This document shows positions 44,812-50,182 of a stretch of 64,000 nt of DNA, piece by piece; the first letter of the stretch is position 1, and each line of letters begins with the position of its first letter. A program made the translations under genes and the position numbers. Origin of the DNA: Rebecca billardiae RCC1528 (lineage: Eukaryota; Protista; Haptophyta); contig OZ251235.1 of the NCBI GenBank assembly GCA_965240325.2, forward strand, positions 496,001-560,000. Direction: 5' to 3'. The notes beneath the pieces were generated by a model. It searched no databases, had not been told where the DNA came from, and saw nothing but the letters and a program-made list of their open reading frames with translations.

Positions 44812-47058
44812 TCACGAGTCGAGGGCGTCCACCTCGTCGAGGATCTCGCGCACGCGCGCGCGGATGAAGCCCGCCTCCGGCTCGAGGCCCCGCCGGTGCG
44901 GGTCGCCCGCTCGGTGGCCGGCCGCGCTGCGGATCGGCGCGAGGGTCGCGCGCGTGCCGAGCATCGCCGCCTCCTCGCGCGCGCCGCCGAGCGTGAAGTA
45001 CTTGTCGGTGTCGCACGGCATGAGCAGCACTCGCGCGCGCACGGCGCCGAGCGCGGCGCGCAGGTCGCCCTCCGCGTTGCGCGACACGTCGGCGCTCAGC
45101 CACGTGCCGAGCTGCGCGAGCATGTCGTCCGCGTCCGAGCGCAGGAAGCCGTGCACGTACGAGCTGCGGCCGAAGCTCTCCGCGTCCACGTGCCCGCCGT
45201 CCGTCGGTCCGTACGCGTCTGCGCGCTCGAAGTGGCCCTCCTCGTACCACGGCTCGCCCACGCCCCAGCCGGCGTAGATGCGGGCGAACGCGCGGAGGCC
45301 TGCGGCGGGCATCGCGGTGAAGCGGCCGAGCGCCTCGTCCCACGCCGGGTCGGCCTTGAGCGCGGCGACGAGCGAGTGGATGAACGTCGCGTTCAGCGCG
45401 GAGCAGCGCGCGCCGCCGCACACGACCGCGACCGCGCGGCACGCGTGTGGGTAGCGGACTGCCCACTCGAACGCCTGGAGGCCACCCATGGAGTAACCGT
45501 AGACGAGCCGGAGCTGGCGCGCGCCCGCGCCGCCGCCCACGCGCACGCCGAGCTGCTCCAGCACGGCCGCCTGCGCGCGCACGTTGTCGCCCACCGTCGG
45601 CGGGCCGCCCGGGCCCGAGAAGACGCGCCAGAGGGCCTCGCGGCTGCCAGCGCTCGCGCACGCCGCCGTGGACGGCGAGAGCGACACGCCGTTTCCGAGA
45701 AGGTTCACGGCGACGACGCAGTGCCGGTCGGTGTCGAGCGTGGCGCCCGGGCCGATCTGGTGCTCGAGCTCGGCGTGCACCGCGTCGAAGCTCGTCGGGT
45801 GCAGGATCACGCCGCGGCCGCTCGCCTCCGACGGCGGCGCGCCGTACAGCCGATACGCGACAAACGACCCTTCCGGGAAATGACCGCCGCGCTCTCGCGC
45901 CATGCCCGAGAGGTCGAGCGTGCGCAGCGCGGGGTCGGCGCGCGCGCGGAGCGCGGCGACGCCACCGCGCACCTCGGCGCGCGGGAGCGCGAGCGCCGCG
46001 AGCGCCGAGGGCGAGGCCTCGCCCTCCGCGGCACCACCGCCGCCGCCGCCGCGCGCCGCCGCCTCGGCCGCGCTCGCCTCCGCCGCCCAGCTGCGCGGCG
46101 CCCACAACAGCCGCTCTCGCGCCTTGCGGCTGCAGAGCACAGACGCGTTGCCGTCGAGGGGCGAGCGCTCCTCGAGCGCGGCGAGGCCGAGCGTGTCTCG
46201 CAGCAGATCGCGCGTCTCCACGCCGAAGCGCGTCTCCGGCGCCGCGAGCAGGTACGCCTCGTGCGCGCCCGGCGCCGCCGCCTCGGCGCGCCCGACCGCG
46301 GCGACGTGCGCGGCCACGACGTCGTCCTCGTGGGCGTACGCCCAGAAGACGAGGGGCAAGGGGCGCTCGGCGGTGGGCGGCGCCCAGGGCAGCTCGGCCC
46401 ACTTCTCCGCCTTGATCACGTTCGTGAAGCGCAGGCTGACGAACGACGTCGCCGTCGCCGTGCGCGCCGCCGCCTCGAGCACGAGCTCGCACGCCGCCTT
46501 GGACAGCCCGTAGCTCTCCAGAGGGGACGGCGGGTGCGCCTCGTCGAGCGGCAGGTAGCGCGGGCGGAGGGCCTGCTCGCCCGCGCCCGCGTGGGACCAG
46601 CCCATCGCGAACGCCGAGCTCGAGAAGACCACGCGCTGCGCGCCCGCCCACACGGCCGCGTCGACGACGGCGGCGGTCGAGCCCACGTTGTCGCGCAGCA
46701 GCGCAGGCGGCGACGCGTCCTCAAGGCCGATGACGTCGGCGGCGCGCGCGCCGGCGCCCGTGGCGGCGACGGCGGGGGGCGGCGTTGCCGAGGGCCCGGG
46801 CCAGGCCGCGCAGTGCACCACGGCGTGCACGCCGCCAGCACCGCCCATCGCTGCGCGCAGCGCGTCATGATCCTTGCCCGCGCCATCGGCGGCGGCCGCG
46901 AGGTCGCACGTGACAAACTCGTCCCACGAGGCGGGACCCGCGGGCTCGGGGGCACGGTCGACTCCGACGATAGCGTACTGACCGGTGGCGCGAAGCGCCG
47001 CGGCCACCTTGCCGCCCAGCCGCCCGGCGGCGCCAGTGACGACGACGCGGTGCCGCAT
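44812..47058 (-). CDS. Fusion protein: extended SDR (NAD-dependent epimerase/dehydrogenase) + MetX-like alpha/beta hydrolase, intronless, 748 aa
   Basis: SDR: VTGAAGRLG, VVHCAA, VVFSSS, YGLSK, SLRF. Ala/Gly linker. Hydrolase: LDTDRHCVVAVNLLGNG, GYSMGG (Ser), DTDKYF (Asp), AGHRAG (His). Confidence 0.88.
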   Translation of the reverse strand: MRHRVVVTGAAGRLGGKVAAALRATGQYAIVGVDRAPEPAGPASWDEFVTCDLAAAADGAGKDHDALRAAMGGAGGVHAVVHCAAWPGPSATPPPAVAATGAGARAADVIGLEDASPPALLRDNVGSTAAVVDAAVWAGAQRVVFSSSAFAMGWSHAGAGEQALRPRYLPLDEAHPPSPLESYGLSKAACELVLEAAARTATATSFVSLRFTNVIKAEKWAELPWAPPTAERPLPLVFWAYAHEDDVVAAHVAAVGRAEAAAPGAHEAYLLAAPETRFGVETRDLLRDTLGLAALEERSPLDGNASVLCSRKARERLLWAPRSWAAEASAAEAAARGGGGGGAAEGEASPSALAALALPRAEVRGGVAALRARADPALRTLDLSGMARERGGHFPEGSFVAYRLYGAPPSEASGRGVILHPTSFDAVHAELEHQIGPGATLDTDRHCVVAVNLLGNGVSLSPSTAACASAGSREALWRVFSGPGGPPTVGDNVRAQAAVLEQLGVRVGGGAGARQLRLVYGYSMGGLQAFEWAVRYPHACRAVAVVCGGARCSALNATFIHSLVAALKADPAWDEALGRFTAMPAAGLRAFARIYAGWGVGEPWYEEGHFERADAYGPTDGGHVDAESFGRSSYVHGFLRSDADDMLAQLGTWLSADVSRNAEGDLRAALGAVRARVLLMPCDTDKYFTLGGAREEAAMLGTRATLAPIRSAAGHRAGDPHRRGLEPEAGFIRARVREILDEVDALDS

Positions 47059-47377
47059 CGGCGTGTCCCCGTGTCGTACGTATCGGTGGGGCGTGAACAC
47101 GCGAGCAGTCCGCCTTTGATGCTTTTCCAGCTTGCAAGTCTGAATCGTTTCGGCTCTCAGACTGCCGATTCGGCCGCAGCACTCTGCACTCCAGCAAAAG
47201 CAACTGGAAAAGATTACTTGTTCAGGGTCTTCGCCTTTCGCCGGTCGAGCCTCATTCGCCGCGGGCGGTGATGAATGCCTACAACATGAGTACCGAGTAC
47301 GAACCGATACCGGGTACGGCTTGTACTGGTAGCTGTAGCCGCTTGTCGAGTCGCTCTCGCTCGCCAGCGCGGTCCAG

Positions 47378-48388
47378 ATGCTCCAGGTCGGACGACGTGC
47401 GCTCGCGGTCGGGTGGGCGACGCCTGCGCGCGCCCTGTCGTCGGCGGCGACTCTGCGCAGCCCGTCGCCCGCCTCCTTCGCCGCGCCCCCGCCCCTCCGC
47501 GCGGATCTGCCGCCCGTCGATGCGGAGCGGATCGTGACGCCGGACGTGGCGCAGGCGTTTGCCGCGGACGGCGCCGTCGTGCTGCGCGGCGCGTTTGCCC
47601 AGGGCGGGTGGGTGGAGGCGCTGCGCGCGGCGGCCGAGGACAACATGGCGAATCCAGGGCCGCTGTGCGACGAGCACGCGCAGGCGCAGGGCGCGCCGGG
47701 CCGCTTCCATGACGACCAGTTTCTGTGGCTGAGGCATGACACTTTTCGGCAGTTTGTCACCGCCTCGGGCGCTGCGGCGGTGGCCGCGCGCGCGATGGGC
47801 TCGACGACGGCGCACATCTTCTACGACCAACTTCTCGCGAAAGAGCCGGGCACGATCACGCCCACGCCGTGGCACAACGACACCTCCTACTGGCACCTCT
47901 CGGGCAAGCAGATCTGCTCGATCTGGGTCGCCCTCGACGAGGTGGACGCCGAGGCGGGCGTCGCGTACGTCGCCGGCTCGCACACGTGGGGCCTGCGCCA
48001 CCGCGTGACGAACTTCTCGGGGGACGCGCACTCCGACCGTAACGTCTACGAGGGCGTCGACGGCGCCGACCCTTTCGACCAGCTGCCGGACATCGACGCG
48101 GGCGTCGCGGACGGCTCGCTCCGGCTGCTCAGCTGGGACATGGCGCCTGGTGACGCGCTGCTCTTCGACTCGGCCGCCGTGCACGGCGCGCCTGGCCCGC
48201 GGGCGGGTCTCACCCGCCGCCGCCGCGGGTACGCGACGCGCTGGTGCGGTGACGACGTCCGCTTCGACAGCCGGCCGGGGACGATGGACCAGGGCTGGCG
48301 CGCTGCCGGCTACGACTGCGGCCTGTCGCACGGCGAGCCGATCGCGTCCGGCTTGCACCCAGACGTCCTGGCGATGCGCCGGGCGTGA
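47378..48388 (+). CDS. PhyH-family Fe(II)/2-oxoglutarate dioxygenase with presequence-like N-terminus, intronless
   Basis: DGAVVLRG, KEPG, TPWHND (HxD), SIWVALD, GSH, PGDAL, VHGA, RRRG. Confidence 0.92.
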   Translation: MLQVGRRALAVGWATPARALSSAATLRSPSPASFAAPPPLRADLPPVDAERIVTPDVAQAFAADGAVVLRGAFAQGGWVEALRAAAEDNMANPGPLCDEHAQAQGAPGRFHDDQFLWLRHDTFRQFVTASGAAAVAARAMGSTTAHIFYDQLLAKEPGTITPTPWHNDTSYWHLSGKQICSIWVALDEVDAEAGVAYVAGSHTWGLRHRVTNFSGDAHSDRNVYEGVDGADPFDQLPDIDAGVADGSLRLLSWDMAPGDALLFDSAAVHGAPGPRAGLTRRRRGYATRWCGDDVRFDSRPGTMDQGWRAAGYDCGLSHGEPIASGLHPDVLAMRRA

Positions 48389-48841
48389 GCCGCCAATGTT
48401 GCGCTTGGCGCCGGTGGACGGTGGTACGCCCGGCGGTACGCCGCGCACGCAGCCGGCCGCCAGGCGAGTCGTCGGGCGGTGCCATCGCGCGGAGCACAGC
48501 AACCGAGTTCATGGCCGTCGCCTGGCGAGGGCTGCTAACGGTGTGCCGTGGGCTGCGGTACGACGACCGATGCATGTGCCCGAATGCCACCGCGGTGACC
48601 ACTCACCAGTCACCACGGCTGAGTGGCAGAAAACTACTGAGAAAAAGTGTGTGAGCTGTGGAGTTGATCAAGAGTGCAGGTGTCTGTCTGATGAGTCTGA
48701 GATCCTCGCCTGACCTGATCTGTAGATCATTCGAACGTTCTGAGCCTGAAGATTCCAGCATGATGAATAGTTGCATCACACTTGCGGAAGCGGAAGGCTG
48801 CCCCATCGGGGCGCGAAAAGACGAGGTGAGATCTGGGCGTG

Positions 48842-50182
48842 ATGCCGCCCGCGAACGCGAAGGAGAATGGCCTGCAGCTGGCGAAGATCGCCAGTGAGCA
48901 GGGGATCCAAGCATTCCTGGTGTCTTACCTCGACCTCTTCGGCGTGCAGCGCGCCAAGCTCGTGCCGGCGTCCGCGATCGCGAGCGTCGCCAAAAGCGGC
49001 GCGGGGTTTGCCGGCTTTGCCGCGTACTTTGACTCGACGCCCGCGCACGCCGACCTGCTCGCCTTCCCAGACCCCACCTCTCTGATTCGCCTCCCGTGGA
49101 AGCCCGAGGTGGGCTGGCTCGCCTCCGACCTCTGGATCGACGACAAGCCGTACGCGCAATGCCCGCGACGCGCGCTGCGGCTGCAGCTCGAGGCGGCGCG
49201 CGCGGCCGGCTTCTCGTCGTTCAAGACGGGCGTGGAGGTGGAGTTCATGCTGATCGAGCCCTCGGGCGCGATCGACGCGCGCGACGACGCCAAGAAGCCG
49301 TGCTACGAGATCGGCGCCCTCATGCGCCGGTACGACGTGCTCAAGCAGCTGCTGGACTACTGCGAGCAGCTCGGCTGGGGGCCGTACCAGTGCGACCACG
49401 AGGACGCGAACGGTCAGTTCGAGCTCAACTTCGATTACGCCGACGCGCTCGTGACCGCCGACCGCATCGCGTTCCACAAGCTGATGGTGCGCTCCGTCGC
49501 CGAGCAGCACGGCCTGCGCGCGACCTTCATGCCTAAGCCGTTCGCGGACAAGACTGGCAACGGCGCGCACGTGCACTTCACGCTGCACGCGAGCGCGGGC
49601 GACAAGGAGCGCAACGTGTTCGCCGCGCGGGAGGGCGAGGAGGGCGACGAGTACGGGCTCTCGACCACGGCGCGCCACTTCCTCGGCGGCGTGCTCGAGC
49701 ACGTCACCGGCCTTTCCGCCATCGCCAACCCGACCGTCAACTCGTACAAGCGCCTGGGCGCGGCCGCGCCAGACTCGGGTGCGACCTGGGCACCGACCGT
49801 GGCCTCGCACGGCGGCAACGACCGGACACACGTGATCCGGGTGCCCGACGCGCCGCGGTACGAGCTGCGCCTTGCCGACATGGCGTCGCACCCGTACCTG
49901 CTGCCCGCCGCCCTGCTCGCCGCGGGGCTCGACGGCCTGGCGCGCAAGCTCGAGCCGCCGCCGCGCGCCAAGGTGGCCGCGTGGGCGCTGGACCCGGCCG
50001 AGGCGAAGGCGCTGCCGTCCAACCTGCTCGACGCGTTGCGCGCGTTCGAGGCGGACGAGGTGCTGCGGCAGAAGGTGGGCGTGGAGATGTGCGCCGCGCT
50101 GCACAAGCTGCGCATGAAGCAGTGGCGCGAGTACACGATGCACCTCACGGCCTGGGAGCTGGAGACCGGCCTCGACATCTAA
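48842..50182 (+). CDS. gmaS: GlnT/GmaS-type glutamate-amine ligase (gamma-glutamylmethylamide synthetase-like), intronless
   Basis: DLFGVQRAKLVPA, GAGFAGFA, LPWKPEVGWLASD, GVEVEF, DHEDANGQFE, FMPKPF, GNGAHVH, NSYKR, NDRTH, YELR and the WE...LD* C-terminus are characteristic of proteobacterial glnT/gmaS. Substrate is inferred. Confidence 0.85.
   Translation: MPPANAKENGLQLAKIASEQGIQAFLVSYLDLFGVQRAKLVPASAIASVAKSGAGFAGFAAYFDSTPAHADLLAFPDPTSLIRLPWKPEVGWLASDLWIDDKPYAQCPRRALRLQLEAARAAGFSSFKTGVEVEFMLIEPSGAIDARDDAKKPCYEIGALMRRYDVLKQLLDYCEQLGWGPYQCDHEDANGQFELNFDYADALVTADRIAFHKLMVRSVAEQHGLRATFMPKPFADKTGNGAHVHFTLHASAGDKERNVFAAREGEEGDEYGLSTTARHFLGGVLEHVTGLSAIANPTVNSYKRLGAAAPDSGATWAPTVASHGGNDRTHVIRVPDAPRYELRLADMASHPYLLPAALLAAGLDGLARKLEPPPRAKVAAWALDPAEAKALPSNLLDALRAFEADEVLRQKVGVEMCAALHKLRMKQWREYTMHLTAWELETGLDI

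What the first reader, a model, noticed from the sequence alone, without database searches (positions are those of the whole stretch)
44812..50182. Candidate eukaryotic methylamine-utilisation gene cluster: GmaS + PhyH dioxygenase + SDR/hydrolase fusion
Seen: three adjacent intronless enzyme genes (four catalytic domains, catalytic motifs intact) lie between intron-bearing housekeeping genes (APC7, TRAPPC12); the fusion and PhyH are divergent across a 319-bp gap. Known: GlnT/GmaS ligates methylamine to glutamate to give N5-methylglutamine, and bacteria process this onward with MgsABC/MgdABCD, none of which is in this window. Fe/2OG dioxygenases commonly hydroxylate N-methyl groups. Inference: the cluster could be an alternative route. 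GmaS traps methylamine, PhyH hydroxylates the N-methyl group, the SDR oxidises it to N-formyl, and the Ser-Asp-His hydrolase releases glutamine plus formate. Alternatively it makes or recycles a theanine-like gamma-glutamylamide. I am not aware of such a cluster being described in algae.
Basis: partly seen in the sequence, partly recalled or inferred. Interest (0 to 1): 0.9.

Follow-up and report, generated by a model that had tools for sequence, protein, structure and literature searches.

The report
Algal methylamine-type nitrogen-scavenging gene cluster
Three neighbouring genes in this alga (a bacterial-type methylamine-trapping ligase, an iron/2-oxoglutarate oxygenase and a dehydrogenase-esterase fusion) also sit together in several unrelated marine algae. 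In Pelagomonas they are switched on in nitrate-poor ocean water, which points to an undescribed way for phytoplankton to take nitrogen from methylamine-like compounds.

Summary
- an extended-SDR + MetX-like hydrolase fusion, 44812-47058 (-)
- a PhyH-family Fe/2OG dioxygenase, 47378-48388 (+)
- a type III GS, 48842-50182 (+)

The fusion and PhyH are divergent across 319 bp.

**What each gene is.** The ligase is a GmaS by every sequence test available. It scores above the TIGR03105 cut-off, gives 516 bits to the validated Rhodovulum GmaS, and keeps all methylamine-pocket and catalytic residues. The dioxygenase's nearest solved relative is MysH, an oxidative N-dealkylase. The hydrolase domain is closest to the acetyl esterase MekB, not to true MetX.

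**Conservation.** GS, PhyH and SDR genes are clustered, in different orders, in six distinct algal lineages: this pavlovophyte-like alga, three pelagophyte-type lineages and two unplaced ones (one shows only fusion + GS before the contig ends). A seventh keeps the divergent PhyH/fusion pair without GS. None of 80 bacterial PhyH loci has such a cluster.

**Expression.** Published Tara data show the Pelagomonas copies (Pca_1p27820 and Pca_1p27830) co-upregulated in low-nitrate water.

**Reading.** This is most likely a nitrogen-scavenging route for methylamine or other short alkylamines: γ-glutamylation, then oxidative removal of the alkyl group to give glutamine. The chemistry after GmaS is inferred, not shown. 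I found no description of this cluster in the searched literature.

**Earlier notes.** The scan had already noted the ligase and the fusion on this same stretch (s1-350705, s1-350848), and a second GmaS-like locus on another piece of this genome (s1-353099, s1-353195).

The parts
44812..47058 (-). Intronless gene for a 748-aa fusion protein: N-terminal NAD-type extended SDR plus C-terminal MetX-like Ser-Asp-His alpha/beta hydrolase.
   Evidence: ORF and start codon. Pfam PF01370 + PF00561. 23 homologous proteins at 37-64% identity, including Prymnesium parvum. AlphaFold model with mean pLDDT 85.
46024..47058 (-). SDR domain (about aa 1-345). It has GAAGRLG, invariant Ser146-148 and Tyr183/Lys187, and Asp34 at the end of beta-2, which suggests NAD rather than NADP.
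   Evidence: Alignments A2 and A3. Domain model with pLDDT 90. Best PDB matches are only GalE-like, TM about 0.6.
44815..45933 (-). Hydrolase domain (about aa 376-748). Catalytic residues are Ser523 in GYSMGG, Asp685 and His715. It is nearest to MekB-type acetyl esterases.
   Evidence: NF005757 at 246 bits; true MetX models score only 97-100 bits against cut-offs of 331-500. PDB 5e4y at 124 bits. Foldseek to 5e4y MekB: TMt 0.90, rmsd 2.1.
47059..47377 (.). 319-bp divergent intergenic region between the fusion and PhyH. It is presumed to be a shared bidirectional promoter.
   Evidence: Sequence. The same divergent PhyH/fusion pairing is seen in L109/L110, with a gap of about 100-150 bp. The promoter function is inferred.
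47378..48388 (+). Intronless PhyH-family Fe(II)/2-oxoglutarate dioxygenase, 336 aa. It has an Arg/Ala/Ser-rich N-terminal extension of about 45 residues, possibly a mitochondrial presequence.
   Evidence: PF05721 at 91 bits. Best PDB match is MysH at 113 bits. Belongs to a eukaryotic clade and groups with Pavlovales sp. CCMP2436. Targeting is inferred; the Pelagomonas model was predicted mitochondrial by the paper's authors.
48842..50182 (+). Intronless GmaS-type (GlnT / 'type III') glutamate-amine ligase, 446 aa from the ATG (the ORF list starts at a GTG at 48839).
   Evidence: TIGR03105 at 538 bits, above its cut-off. 516 bits to RhGmaS 7cql and 295 bits to 9qur 'glutamate--methylamine ligase', against 205 bits or less to ordinary GS. 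All GmaS signature residues are conserved.

Best explanation
This is a conserved algal gene cluster for taking nitrogen from methylamine, or from other short primary alkylamines, without the bacterial N-methylglutamate pathway.

Step 1 (well supported by sequence). The GmaS-type ligase uses ATP to attach the amine to the gamma-carboxyl of glutamate. The product is gamma-glutamylmethylamide (N5-methylglutamine).

Step 2 (inferred). The MysH-like Fe(II)/2-oxoglutarate dioxygenase hydroxylates the carbon next to the amide nitrogen, giving N5-hydroxymethylglutamine, a carbinolamide.

Step 3 (inferred, weakest). The NAD-dependent SDR domain oxidises this to an N5-formyl imide (N5-acyl for longer amines). 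The attached MekB-like Ser-Asp-His esterase domain then cleaves off formate (or acetate) and leaves glutamine.

The amine nitrogen thus ends up directly as the amide nitrogen of glutamine, ready for GOGAT. The cluster is switched on when nitrate is scarce.
For: Functional linkage of the genes:
- GS + PhyH + SDR(-hydrolase) genes are neighbours in six distinct algal lineages, in different orders and orientations. These are the window; L002-4 (probably Pelagomonas; also has an adjacent Amt transporter); L011, Pelagophyceae sp. CCMP2097; L093/94/96/102 with L007; L095, fusion + GS before the contig ends; and L111-113, with a stand-alone SDR.
- A seventh lineage, L109/110, keeps the divergent PhyH/fusion pair but has no GS on the contig.
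- In P. calceolata the adjacent models Pca_1p27820 (type III GS + PhyH) and Pca_1p27830 (epimerase + MetX-like) are both up in low-nitrate Tara samples: log2FC 1.44, padj 5.8e-9, and log2FC 1.29, padj 2.0e-6 (PMC12054182 Table S2).

GmaS identity:
- TIGR03105 scores above its cut-off.
- 516 bits to the biochemically validated RhGmaS.
- K30', A48' (replacing the GS Asp50'), Y147, Q175, D177, E179, E186, N188, W300 (replacing the Glu-flap Glu), R312 and R317 are conserved in the window protein. They are also conserved in every other cluster-linked algal GS compared (L002, L007, L011, L111), except that K30' falls in a part missing from the L111 gene model. A non-GmaS GS-like outgroup differs at Q175, D177 and N188.

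Dioxygenase:
- Nearest solved relative is MysH (E 1e-31). MysH is proposed to alpha-hydroxylate the carbon next to N, with spontaneous C-N cleavage afterwards (PMC10666671).

Esterase and SDR:
- Closest in sequence and fold to the acetyl esterases MekB and 5d6o: TMt 0.88-0.92, rmsd 2.1-2.4. Acyltransferases fit worse (TMt 0.68-0.87, mostly rmsd 3-6).
- The catalytic triad is invariant in 20 homologues.
- Asp34 at the end of beta-2 is nearly invariant, which fits an NAD+-dependent dehydrogenase (the rule is established knowledge).
Against: - No biochemical or expression data exist for this organism. No RNA run was listed, and the laid reads were uninformative.
- The SDR domain is an extended GalE-like SDR, a family that usually acts on nucleotide sugars. 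It has no close characterised relative.
- One lineage (L111-113) has the cluster without a hydrolase domain, so that step may be dispensable or carried out elsewhere.
- Carbinolamides formed by MysH-like enzymes may simply fall apart, which would leave no role for the SDR in the route as drawn.
- PhyH has a likely organelle presequence, whereas the fusion and this GS start directly at their conserved cores, so the enzymes may not share a compartment.
- RhGmaS also accepts ethylamine, propylamine and hydroxylamine, so the amine is not pinned down.
- In several algae (Prymnesium, Chrysophaeum, Pavlovales sp. CCMP2436) and in the land plant Selaginella the homologues are dispersed.
- PMC7574528 states that microalgae usually cannot metabolise methylamines.
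Confidence: 0.45

Rival explanations
1. Same entry step, different division of labour. GmaS makes gamma-glutamylmethylamide. The MysH-like dioxygenase alone demethylates it: hydroxylation, then spontaneous loss of formaldehyde, giving glutamine. The SDR-esterase fusion does not touch the glutamyl compound. Instead it disposes of the aldehyde by oxidising a formaldehyde adduct and hydrolysing the resulting formyl (thio)ester. This would be analogous to glutathione-dependent formaldehyde dehydrogenase plus S-formylglutathione hydrolase.
For: - MysH chemistry ends in spontaneous C-N cleavage.
- The hydrolase domain is a small-acyl esterase type.
- A dehydrogenase followed by a serine esterase is the established logic of formaldehyde detoxification (textbook knowledge).
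- The cluster can exist without the hydrolase domain.
- The PhyH/fusion divergent pair is the most tightly linked unit.
Against: - The SDR is not related to class III alcohol dehydrogenases, and the esterase is not esterase D.
- No thiol-adduct-forming enzyme is in the cluster.
- N-hydroxymethyl amides are comparatively stable (chemical knowledge), so an enzyme acting on them is plausible.
Confidence: 0.2
2. The cluster handles another amine or makes a gamma-glutamyl amide metabolite. The ligase glutamylates ethylamine, ethanolamine, a polyamine or another small amine. PhyH, the SDR and the hydrolase then tailor or recycle the product. This would resemble the Puu, Ipu or theanine-type routes.
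For: - RhGmaS has broad amine specificity.
- Gamma-glutamylation followed by oxidation and hydrolysis is an established pattern (PuuABCD, IpuC-I; textbook knowledge).
- The closest esterases act on acetyl esters, which would fit an N-ethyl substrate giving an N-acetyl intermediate.
- An unchecked note reports a second GmaS-like locus flanked by transporters elsewhere in this genome.
Against: - Every residue of the RhGmaS methylamine pocket is conserved in the algal enzymes, and RhGmaS has its lowest Km for methylamine.
- Induction under low nitrate fits scavenging better than synthesis of an N-containing metabolite.
Confidence: 0.2
3. The cluster tailors mycosporine-like amino acids or other secondary metabolites. 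The dioxygenase would be a true MysH-type enzyme and the other genes would modify a sunscreen or osmolyte.
For: - MysH is the best solved match for the dioxygenase.
- In Prymnesium the fusion lies next to an ATP-grasp gene, the enzyme class of MysC/MysD.
Against: - Identity to MysH is only about one third.
- No DDGS/EEVS, O-methyltransferase or MysC/D genes lie next to the cluster in any locus.
- This PhyH subfamily is very widespread in bacteria (at least 596 loci) with variable neighbours.
- The ligase is a GmaS, not an ATP-grasp enzyme.
- Low-nitrate induction is unexpected for N-rich sunscreens.
Confidence: 0.05
4. The genes have unrelated functions and are adjacent by chance or by inheritance of an ancestral block.
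For: - The homologues are dispersed in Prymnesium, Chrysophaeum, Pavlovales sp. CCMP2436 and Selaginella.
- Three of the clustered lineages are pelagophyte-type and so are not fully independent.
Against: - Order and orientation differ in nearly every lineage while adjacency is kept. That argues for selection rather than inertia.
- The flanking genes differ between lineages.
- The Pelagomonas copies are co-upregulated in situ.
Confidence: 0.05

Closest known systems
Bacterial GmaS / N-methylglutamate pathway (gmaS-mgsABC-mgdABCD), e.g. Rhodovulum sp. 12E13 GmaS (PDB 7cql; PMC7948447)
   Same: The first enzyme is the same. The window ligase is about 55-60% identical to bacterial type III GS/GmaS proteins, gives 516 bits to RhGmaS, and keeps all catalytic and methylamine-pocket residues. 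The likely overall purpose, taking N from methylamine, is also the same.
   Different: - The host is eukaryotic and the genes are nuclear.
- No N-methylglutamate synthase or dehydrogenase families appear among the Pfam hits of the genes next to the cluster in the five other algal loci examined.
- The conserved partners are instead a PhyH dioxygenase and an SDR-esterase fusion.
- The proposed product is glutamine, not N-methylglutamate or methylene-THF.
MysH (Nostoc linckia Fe/2OG dioxygenase of palythine biosynthesis; PDB 9c9n, 9pze)
   Same: - It belongs to the same PhyH subfamily, sharing WHNDxxYW, GSHxWG and RRxxxTxWxGDDV motifs.
- MysH is proposed to hydroxylate the carbon alpha to a nitrogen, which is followed by C-N cleavage. 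That is the chemistry needed to dealkylate a gamma-glutamyl-alkylamide.
   Different: - Identity is only about one third.
- No MAA genes lie nearby.
- The algal protein belongs to a eukaryote-wide clade that includes streptophytes, Bigelowiella, haptophytes and pelagophytes.
- Its substrate is unknown.
MekB (Pseudomonas veronii acetyl esterase, PDB 5e4y/5efz) and the C. glutamicum acetylester hydrolase (5d6o): MetX-like esterases
   Same: Best sequence match (124 bits) and best structural match (TMt 0.90, rmsd 2.1) for the C-terminal domain. The Ser-Asp-His triad is shared. These enzymes hydrolyse small acyl esters rather than transferring acyl groups.
   Different: - In the algae the domain is fused to an extended SDR.
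- Identity is 26-28%.
- The proposed substrate is an N-acyl imide rather than an O-ester. This is untested.
Gamma-glutamylation-dependent amine catabolism (PuuABCD for putrescine; IpuC-I for isopropylamine)
   Same: The pathway logic is the same: a GS-like ligase masks the amine as a gamma-glutamyl amide, an oxidase, hydroxylase or dehydrogenase modifies the alkyl part, and a hydrolase finishes the route.
   Different: - The enzyme families for every downstream step are different.
- Those pathways regenerate glutamate, whereas the route proposed here would keep the nitrogen as glutamine.
Cephalosporin C late steps (2OG-dependent hydroxylase followed by the MetX-like acetyltransferase CefG, PDB 2vat)
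   Same: This is a precedent for a 2OG oxygenase product being handled by a MetX-fold enzyme. CefG is a significant structural match.
   Different: CefG transfers an acetyl group to a hydroxyl. The algal domain is closer to the esterase branch, and nothing here indicates beta-lactam chemistry.

Membership tests
GmaS (gamma-glutamylmethylamide synthetase; TIGR03105 'type III' GlnT family) | Scores above the curated family model cut-off | tested here: met
   TIGR03105 at 538.4 bits against a cut-off of 469.6. GlnA type I scores 246 bits against a cut-off of 429.
GmaS | Closer to validated GmaS enzymes than to ammonium-using GS | tested here: met
   516 bits to 7cql (RhGmaS) and 295 bits to 9qur, against 205 bits or less to any GS structure.
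GmaS | Catalytic Asp177, Glu186 and Arg312 and the methylamine pocket (Tyr147, Gln175, Glu179, Asn188, Lys30') are present. The GS ammonium-binding Asp50' is replaced by Ala, and the Glu-flap Glu by Trp. | tested here: met
   All are conserved in the window protein and in the other cluster-linked algal GSs compared, apart from K30' falling in a part missing from the L111 gene model. Only Trp189 is changed, to Phe, in the window protein.
GmaS | Kinetic preference for methylamine over ammonium | not testable with these tools
   This needs a recombinant enzyme assay.
Bacterial N-methylglutamate pathway operon | gmaS accompanied by mgsABC (GATase_2/GXGXG/Glu_synthase-like) and mgdABCD (sarcosine-oxidase-like) genes | tested here: not met
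   No such Pfam families are listed for the genes called next to the cluster in L002, L007, L011, L109 and L111. The ORFs of the window that I scanned gave only TPR, F-box-like, BRCT and endonuclease/exonuclease/phosphatase hits. The window was not scanned exhaustively and the rest of the genome was not searched.
PhyH-family Fe(II)/2OG dioxygenase | PF05721 above its cut-off, with the HxD...H iron triad and a 2OG-binding Arg | tested here: met
   91 bits against a cut-off of 22. H, D, H and the RRR/R columns are invariant in 19 homologues.
MysH (MAA-to-palythine oxygenase) | Orthology, and a genomic context of MAA genes (mysA-D) | tested here: not met
   It is the best PDB hit, but identity is only about a third. 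No mys genes lie in any algal locus. This is a working analogy, not membership.
MetX homoserine O-acetyltransferase | Scores above the equivalog cut-offs | tested here: not met
   TIGR01392 at 96.7 bits against 500, and NF001209 at 99.6 bits against 331. KEGG-style 'homoserine O-acetyltransferase' labels on the homologues are over-annotations.
MetX-like acetyl esterases (MekB type; NF005757/PRK07581 relatives) | Ser-Asp-His triad, and best sequence and fold match to the esterase branch | tested here: met
   The triad is invariant. 5e4y gives 124 bits and TMt 0.90. NF005757 scores 246 bits, below its subfamily cut-off of 332, so this is a relative and not a member of that NCBIfam subfamily.
Extended SDR (NAD-dependent epimerase/dehydratase family) | Rossmann GxxGxxG, catalytic Ser and YxxxK | tested here: met
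   PF01370 at 56 bits. GAAGRLG, and Ser146-148 and Tyr183/Lys187 are invariant. The substrate class is not determinable, since only GalE-like matches at TM about 0.6 were found.

The most novel reading that the evidence does not exclude
Abundant marine phytoplankton (pelagophytes such as Pelagomonas calceolata, and pavlovophyte haptophytes) directly assimilate methylamine nitrogen through a previously unknown eukaryotic pathway. A GmaS of apparent bacterial ancestry is coupled to an Fe/2OG N-demethylase and an SDR-esterase fusion. Together they convert gamma-glutamylmethylamide into glutamine plus a C1 acid, bypassing N-methylglutamate entirely. The pathway is induced in nitrate-poor ocean water.
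Probability: 0.35. Interest if true: 0.9.

Novelty: new variant of a known kind. Interest (0 to 1): 0.8.

Why it matters
Methylamines are ubiquitous, climate-relevant nitrogen compounds in seawater. Their use has been assigned to bacteria: gmaS serves as a bacterial marker gene, and one study states that microalgae usually cannot metabolise them (PMC7948447, PMC7574528).

A conserved, nitrate-responsive GmaS cluster in cosmopolitan picoalgae would mean that eukaryotic phytoplankton compete directly for this nitrogen pool. gmaS-based surveys may then be picking up eukaryotic genes as well.

The downstream enzymes would represent new chemistry: oxidative dealkylation of a gamma-glutamyl amide that keeps the nitrogen as glutamine. 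That could be useful in biocatalysis, for example in theanine or N-alkylglutamine chemistry.

It is also a rare example of a metabolic gene cluster in algae. It combines a ligase of apparent bacterial origin with eukaryote-wide partners. Cultured strains and simple enzyme assays make it directly testable.

Tried and rejected
1. **Bacterial origin of the whole cluster.** I fetched 80 bacterial loci encoding PhyH relatives (35-45% identical). None has a GmaS, an SDR of this type or a MetX-like gene within 10 kb (one has only a distant 28%-identical GS-like gene). Their neighbours are variable: ABC transporter, GST, AMP-ligase, amidohydrolase and others. This gave no clue to the substrate.

2. 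**Expression in the window's own organism.** No RNA run was listed. The only runs holding the stretch gave four short, low-depth contigs, so there is no information.

3. **SDR substrate from structure.** The domain model is confident (pLDDT 90), but its PDB neighbours are generic GalE-type epimerases at TM about 0.6.

4. **ESM Atlas look-ups.** These returned only generic 'alpha/beta hydrolase + epimerase' and 'PhyH' clusters.

5. **GS phylogeny.**
   - With a distant outgroup, the window GS is sister to the sampled bacterial GmaS, and the pelagophyte-type GSs fall outside.
   - The outgroup branch is very long and the bacterial sample is biased towards the window's best hits.
   - Without the outgroup, a single algal clade is not rejected (p-AU 0.47).
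   - One versus several acquisitions therefore stays open.

6. **True MetX function.** Rejected on the model scores.

7. **MAA tailoring.** Considered unlikely; see the rival explanations.

8. **Clustering in other genomes.** The homologues are not clustered in the alga Prymnesium or the land plant Selaginella.

9. **Identity of the flanking genes (APC7, TRAPPC12).** Not pursued beyond the TPR hits.

Full report
**1. What is in the sequence**

Between 44.8 and 50.2 kb the window holds three uninterrupted genes.

- **Fusion gene, 44812-47058, minus strand, 748 aa.** The 1001-aa ORF in the mechanical list includes about 250 codons of high-GC read-through. The ATG at 47058 gives a protein that aligns end to end (98-99% coverage) with 15 of the 23 homologues found.
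- **PhyH gene, 47378-48388, plus strand, 336 aa.** It is divergent from the fusion gene across exactly 319 bp.
- **GS gene, 48842-50182, plus strand, 446 aa from the ATG.** It follows PhyH after 453 bp.

Pfam and NCBIfam give four domains: PF01370 (extended SDR) plus PF00561/MetX-like in the fusion, PF05721 for PhyH, and PF00120 with TIGR03105 at 538 bits (cut-off 469.6) for the ligase.

GC content (0.67-0.73) matches the surroundings. The neighbours are TPR-repeat genes, and the other Pfam hits in the window are typically eukaryotic domains (F-box-like, BRCT). Earlier unchecked notes report copia elements in the same window. I read this as nuclear DNA. I did not verify that the flanking genes are APC7 and TRAPPC12.

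**2. The ligase is a GmaS**

Its best solved relative is the biochemically characterised GmaS of Rhodovulum sp. 12E13 (7cql, 516 bits). Next is an entry named glutamate--methylamine ligase (9qur, 295 bits). Ordinary glutamine synthetases reach at most 205 bits.

The RhGmaS structure paper (PMC7948447) names these residues:
- catalytic residues Asp177, Glu186 and Arg312
- the methylamine pocket: Tyr147, Gln175, Asp177, Glu179, Glu186, Asn188 and Lys30'
- two hallmarks that separate GmaS from GS: Ala48' in place of the ammonium-binding Asp50', and Trp300 in place of the Glu-flap glutamate

All of these are conserved in the window protein. They are also conserved in every other cluster-linked algal GS that I extracted, except that Lys30' falls in a part missing from the L111 gene model. 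An unrelated GS-like protein differs at Gln175, Asp177 and Asn188.

Apart from one 84%-identical unnamed protein, the nearest relatives in the large protein collection are bacterial 'type III glutamate--ammonia ligases' at 55-59% identity.

RhGmaS has its lowest Km for methylamine but also accepts ethylamine, propylamine and hydroxylamine. The amine used by the algal enzyme is therefore probable, not proven.

**3. The partners**

*Dioxygenase.* Its best solved match is MysH (E 1e-31, about one-third identity, with shared motifs over the whole length). MysH is proposed to hydroxylate the carbon alpha to a nitrogen in mycosporine-like amino acids, after which the C-N bond breaks spontaneously (PMC10666671). 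That is oxidative N-dealkylation, the kind of reaction needed to remove the methyl group from gamma-glutamylmethylamide. I treat this as a working analogy and not as membership, because no MAA genes accompany the algal gene.

In a tree, the algal proteins belong to a eukaryotic clade. Streptophytes and Bigelowiella branch first, followed by a well-supported haptophyte + pelagophyte group. The window protein groups with Pavlovales sp. CCMP2436 (SH-aLRT 98), which suggests that the window comes from a pavlovophyte-like haptophyte.

*Hydrolase domain of the fusion.* It is not a true MetX: the equivalog models score 97-100 bits against cut-offs of 331-500. Its closest relatives in sequence (5e4y, 124 bits) and fold (TMt 0.90, rmsd 2.1) are the acetyl esterase MekB and a C. 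glutamicum acetylester hydrolase. Acyltransferases fit worse.

*SDR domain of the fusion.* It has the full catalytic set and a nearly invariant Asp at the end of beta-2, which is typical of NAD-dependent enzymes. Its structural neighbours are only generic GalE-type enzymes, so its substrate cannot be read from homology.

**4. The cluster is conserved, which is the key result**

Contigs carrying homologues show the same families side by side in several other algae, each with a different layout.

| Locus | Organism | Layout |
|---|---|---|
| window | pavlovophyte-like | fusion(-) PhyH(+) GS(+) |
| L002-L004 | compact picoeukaryote from Tara samples, probably P. calceolata | Amt(-) fusion(+) GS(-) PhyH(+) |
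| L011 | Pelagophyceae sp. CCMP2097 | fusion(-) GS(-) PhyH(+) |
| L093/94/96/102, L007 | pelagophyte-like | PhyH(+) fusion(+) unknown(-) GS(-) |
| L095 | unplaced | fusion(+) GS(-), then the contig ends |
| L109/L110 | close to the window's lineage | divergent PhyH/fusion pair; no GS on the contig |
| L111-L113 | another high-GC eukaryote | stand-alone SDR(+) PhyH(+) GS(-); no hydrolase domain |

The flanking genes differ between lineages. The homologues are dispersed in Prymnesium parvum (fusion and PhyH on different chromosomes), Chrysophaeum, Pavlovales sp. CCMP2436 and Selaginella.

Adjacency that persists through repeated rearrangement, in at least two algal phyla, indicates selection for linkage. 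None of 80 bacterial loci with PhyH relatives has a comparable neighbourhood. The cluster therefore looks like a eukaryotic assembly around a ligase of bacterial type.

Whether the algal GmaS genes go back to one transfer is open:
- With a very distant outgroup, the window GS is sister to the sampled bacterial sequences, and the pelagophyte-type ones lie outside.
- Without that outgroup, a single algal clade is not rejected (p-AU 0.47).

**5. Independent expression evidence from the literature**

Table S2 of the Pelagomonas calceolata nitrogen study (PMC12054182) compares 69 low-nitrate Tara samples (<2 uM) with 43 high-nitrate samples. Two adjacent gene models are both significantly up in low nitrate:
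- Pca_1p27820, annotated with 'Glutamine synthetase, type III' plus 'Phytanoyl-CoA dioxygenase': log2FC 1.44, padj 5.8e-9.
- Pca_1p27830, annotated as NAD-dependent epimerase plus MetX-like alpha/beta hydrolase: log2FC 1.29, padj 2.0e-6.

The main text does not single these genes out as a cluster (its passages on glutamine synthetase, phytanoyl-CoA and 'cluster'). This fits a nitrogen-scavenging role and shows co-regulation of all four domains in situ. I could get no expression data for the window's own organism.

**6. Most likely mechanism**

- **Step 1 (well supported).** GmaS ligates methylamine, or a close homologue such as ethylamine, to glutamate.
- **Step 2 (inferred from the MysH analogy).** The dioxygenase hydroxylates the N-alkyl carbon.
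- **Step 3 (inferred from domain types only).** The SDR oxidises the carbinolamide to an N-acyl imide, and the esterase domain releases formate or acetate, leaving glutamine.

The main rival keeps steps 1 and 2 but lets the carbinolamide collapse spontaneously, with the fusion handling the aldehyde. The lineage that lacks the hydrolase domain, and the probable presequence on PhyH but not on the fusion, caution against the linear scheme. Other amines, or a biosynthetic role, remain possible.

My estimates:
- About 0.9 that the genes are functionally linked.
- About 0.75 that the ligase is a methylamine- or short-alkylamine-glutamate ligase.
- About 0.45 for the overall scheme of gamma-glutamylation followed by oxidative dealkylation to glutamine.
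- About 0.25-0.3 for the specific roles assigned to the SDR and the esterase.

**7. Novelty**

Full-text searches found no paper describing a eukaryotic or algal gmaS, or this gene combination. One paper states that microalgae usually cannot metabolise methylamines (PMC7574528). The search covers only the held library.

The logic of gamma-glutamylation-dependent amine catabolism is known. The eukaryotic host, the partner enzymes and the proposed glutamine-retaining outcome are not. I therefore rate it a new variant of a known kind with high interest.

Earlier notes of this scan had flagged the ligase and the fusion separately on this same stretch, and a second GmaS-like locus elsewhere in the genome. 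I confirmed the first two and could not inspect the third.

Noticed in passing
L001:6887-15159 (Prymnesium parvum CM083859.1): In Prymnesium the fusion gene is not next to GS or PhyH. It is flanked by a divergent 613-aa ATP-grasp gene and an Asparaginase_2 gene, with a RidA gene about 8 kb away. An ATP-grasp ligase plus an amidase could be alternative partners for the same fusion enzyme.
   Followed up: no
L002:7519-9030: An Amt-family ammonium (and potentially methylammonium) transporter gene lies divergently next to the fusion gene in the probable Pelagomonas locus. This was seen in that lineage only.
   Followed up: partly
L111:8112-15044: Another high-GC eukaryote has the cluster with a stand-alone 322-aa SDR and no hydrolase domain. 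Its neighbours are an ADP-ribosylglycohydrolase and a sideroflexin (a mitochondrial carrier family linked to one-carbon metabolism).
   Followed up: partly
P0065 (469 aa); Pca_1p27820 in PMC12054182: Some gene models combine a GS domain with PhyH: Gln-synt_N + PhyH in P0065, and GS type III + PhyH in the Pelagomonas model. In L002 the two genes are divergent, so a merged model would be an artefact there. Whether real GS-PhyH fusions exist elsewhere is unresolved.
   Followed up: no
another piece of the same genome (notes s1-353099, s1-353195): Earlier first-stage notes report a second intronless GmaS-like gene flanked by transporters and a divergent glutamate-cysteine ligase. P0145, at 84% identity to the window GS, might be that paralogue or might come from a related species.
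   Followed up: no
PMC12054182 Table S2: The strongest low-nitrate-induced genes of P. calceolata include a formate/nitrite transporter and a formyltetrahydrofolate deformylase. This may connect to formate produced by the proposed route, or may be unrelated.
   Followed up: no
window:43320-43400: A (CA/TG)n microsatellite lies upstream of the cluster. It shows up as a His-Thr repeat in the mechanical ORF translation.
   Followed up: no
L007:3072-3896 / L093 between the fusion and GS: A 274-aa ORF with no Pfam match lies between the fusion and GS genes in one pelagophyte-like lineage. It may be a lineage-specific extra member or an unrelated insertion.
   Followed up: partly
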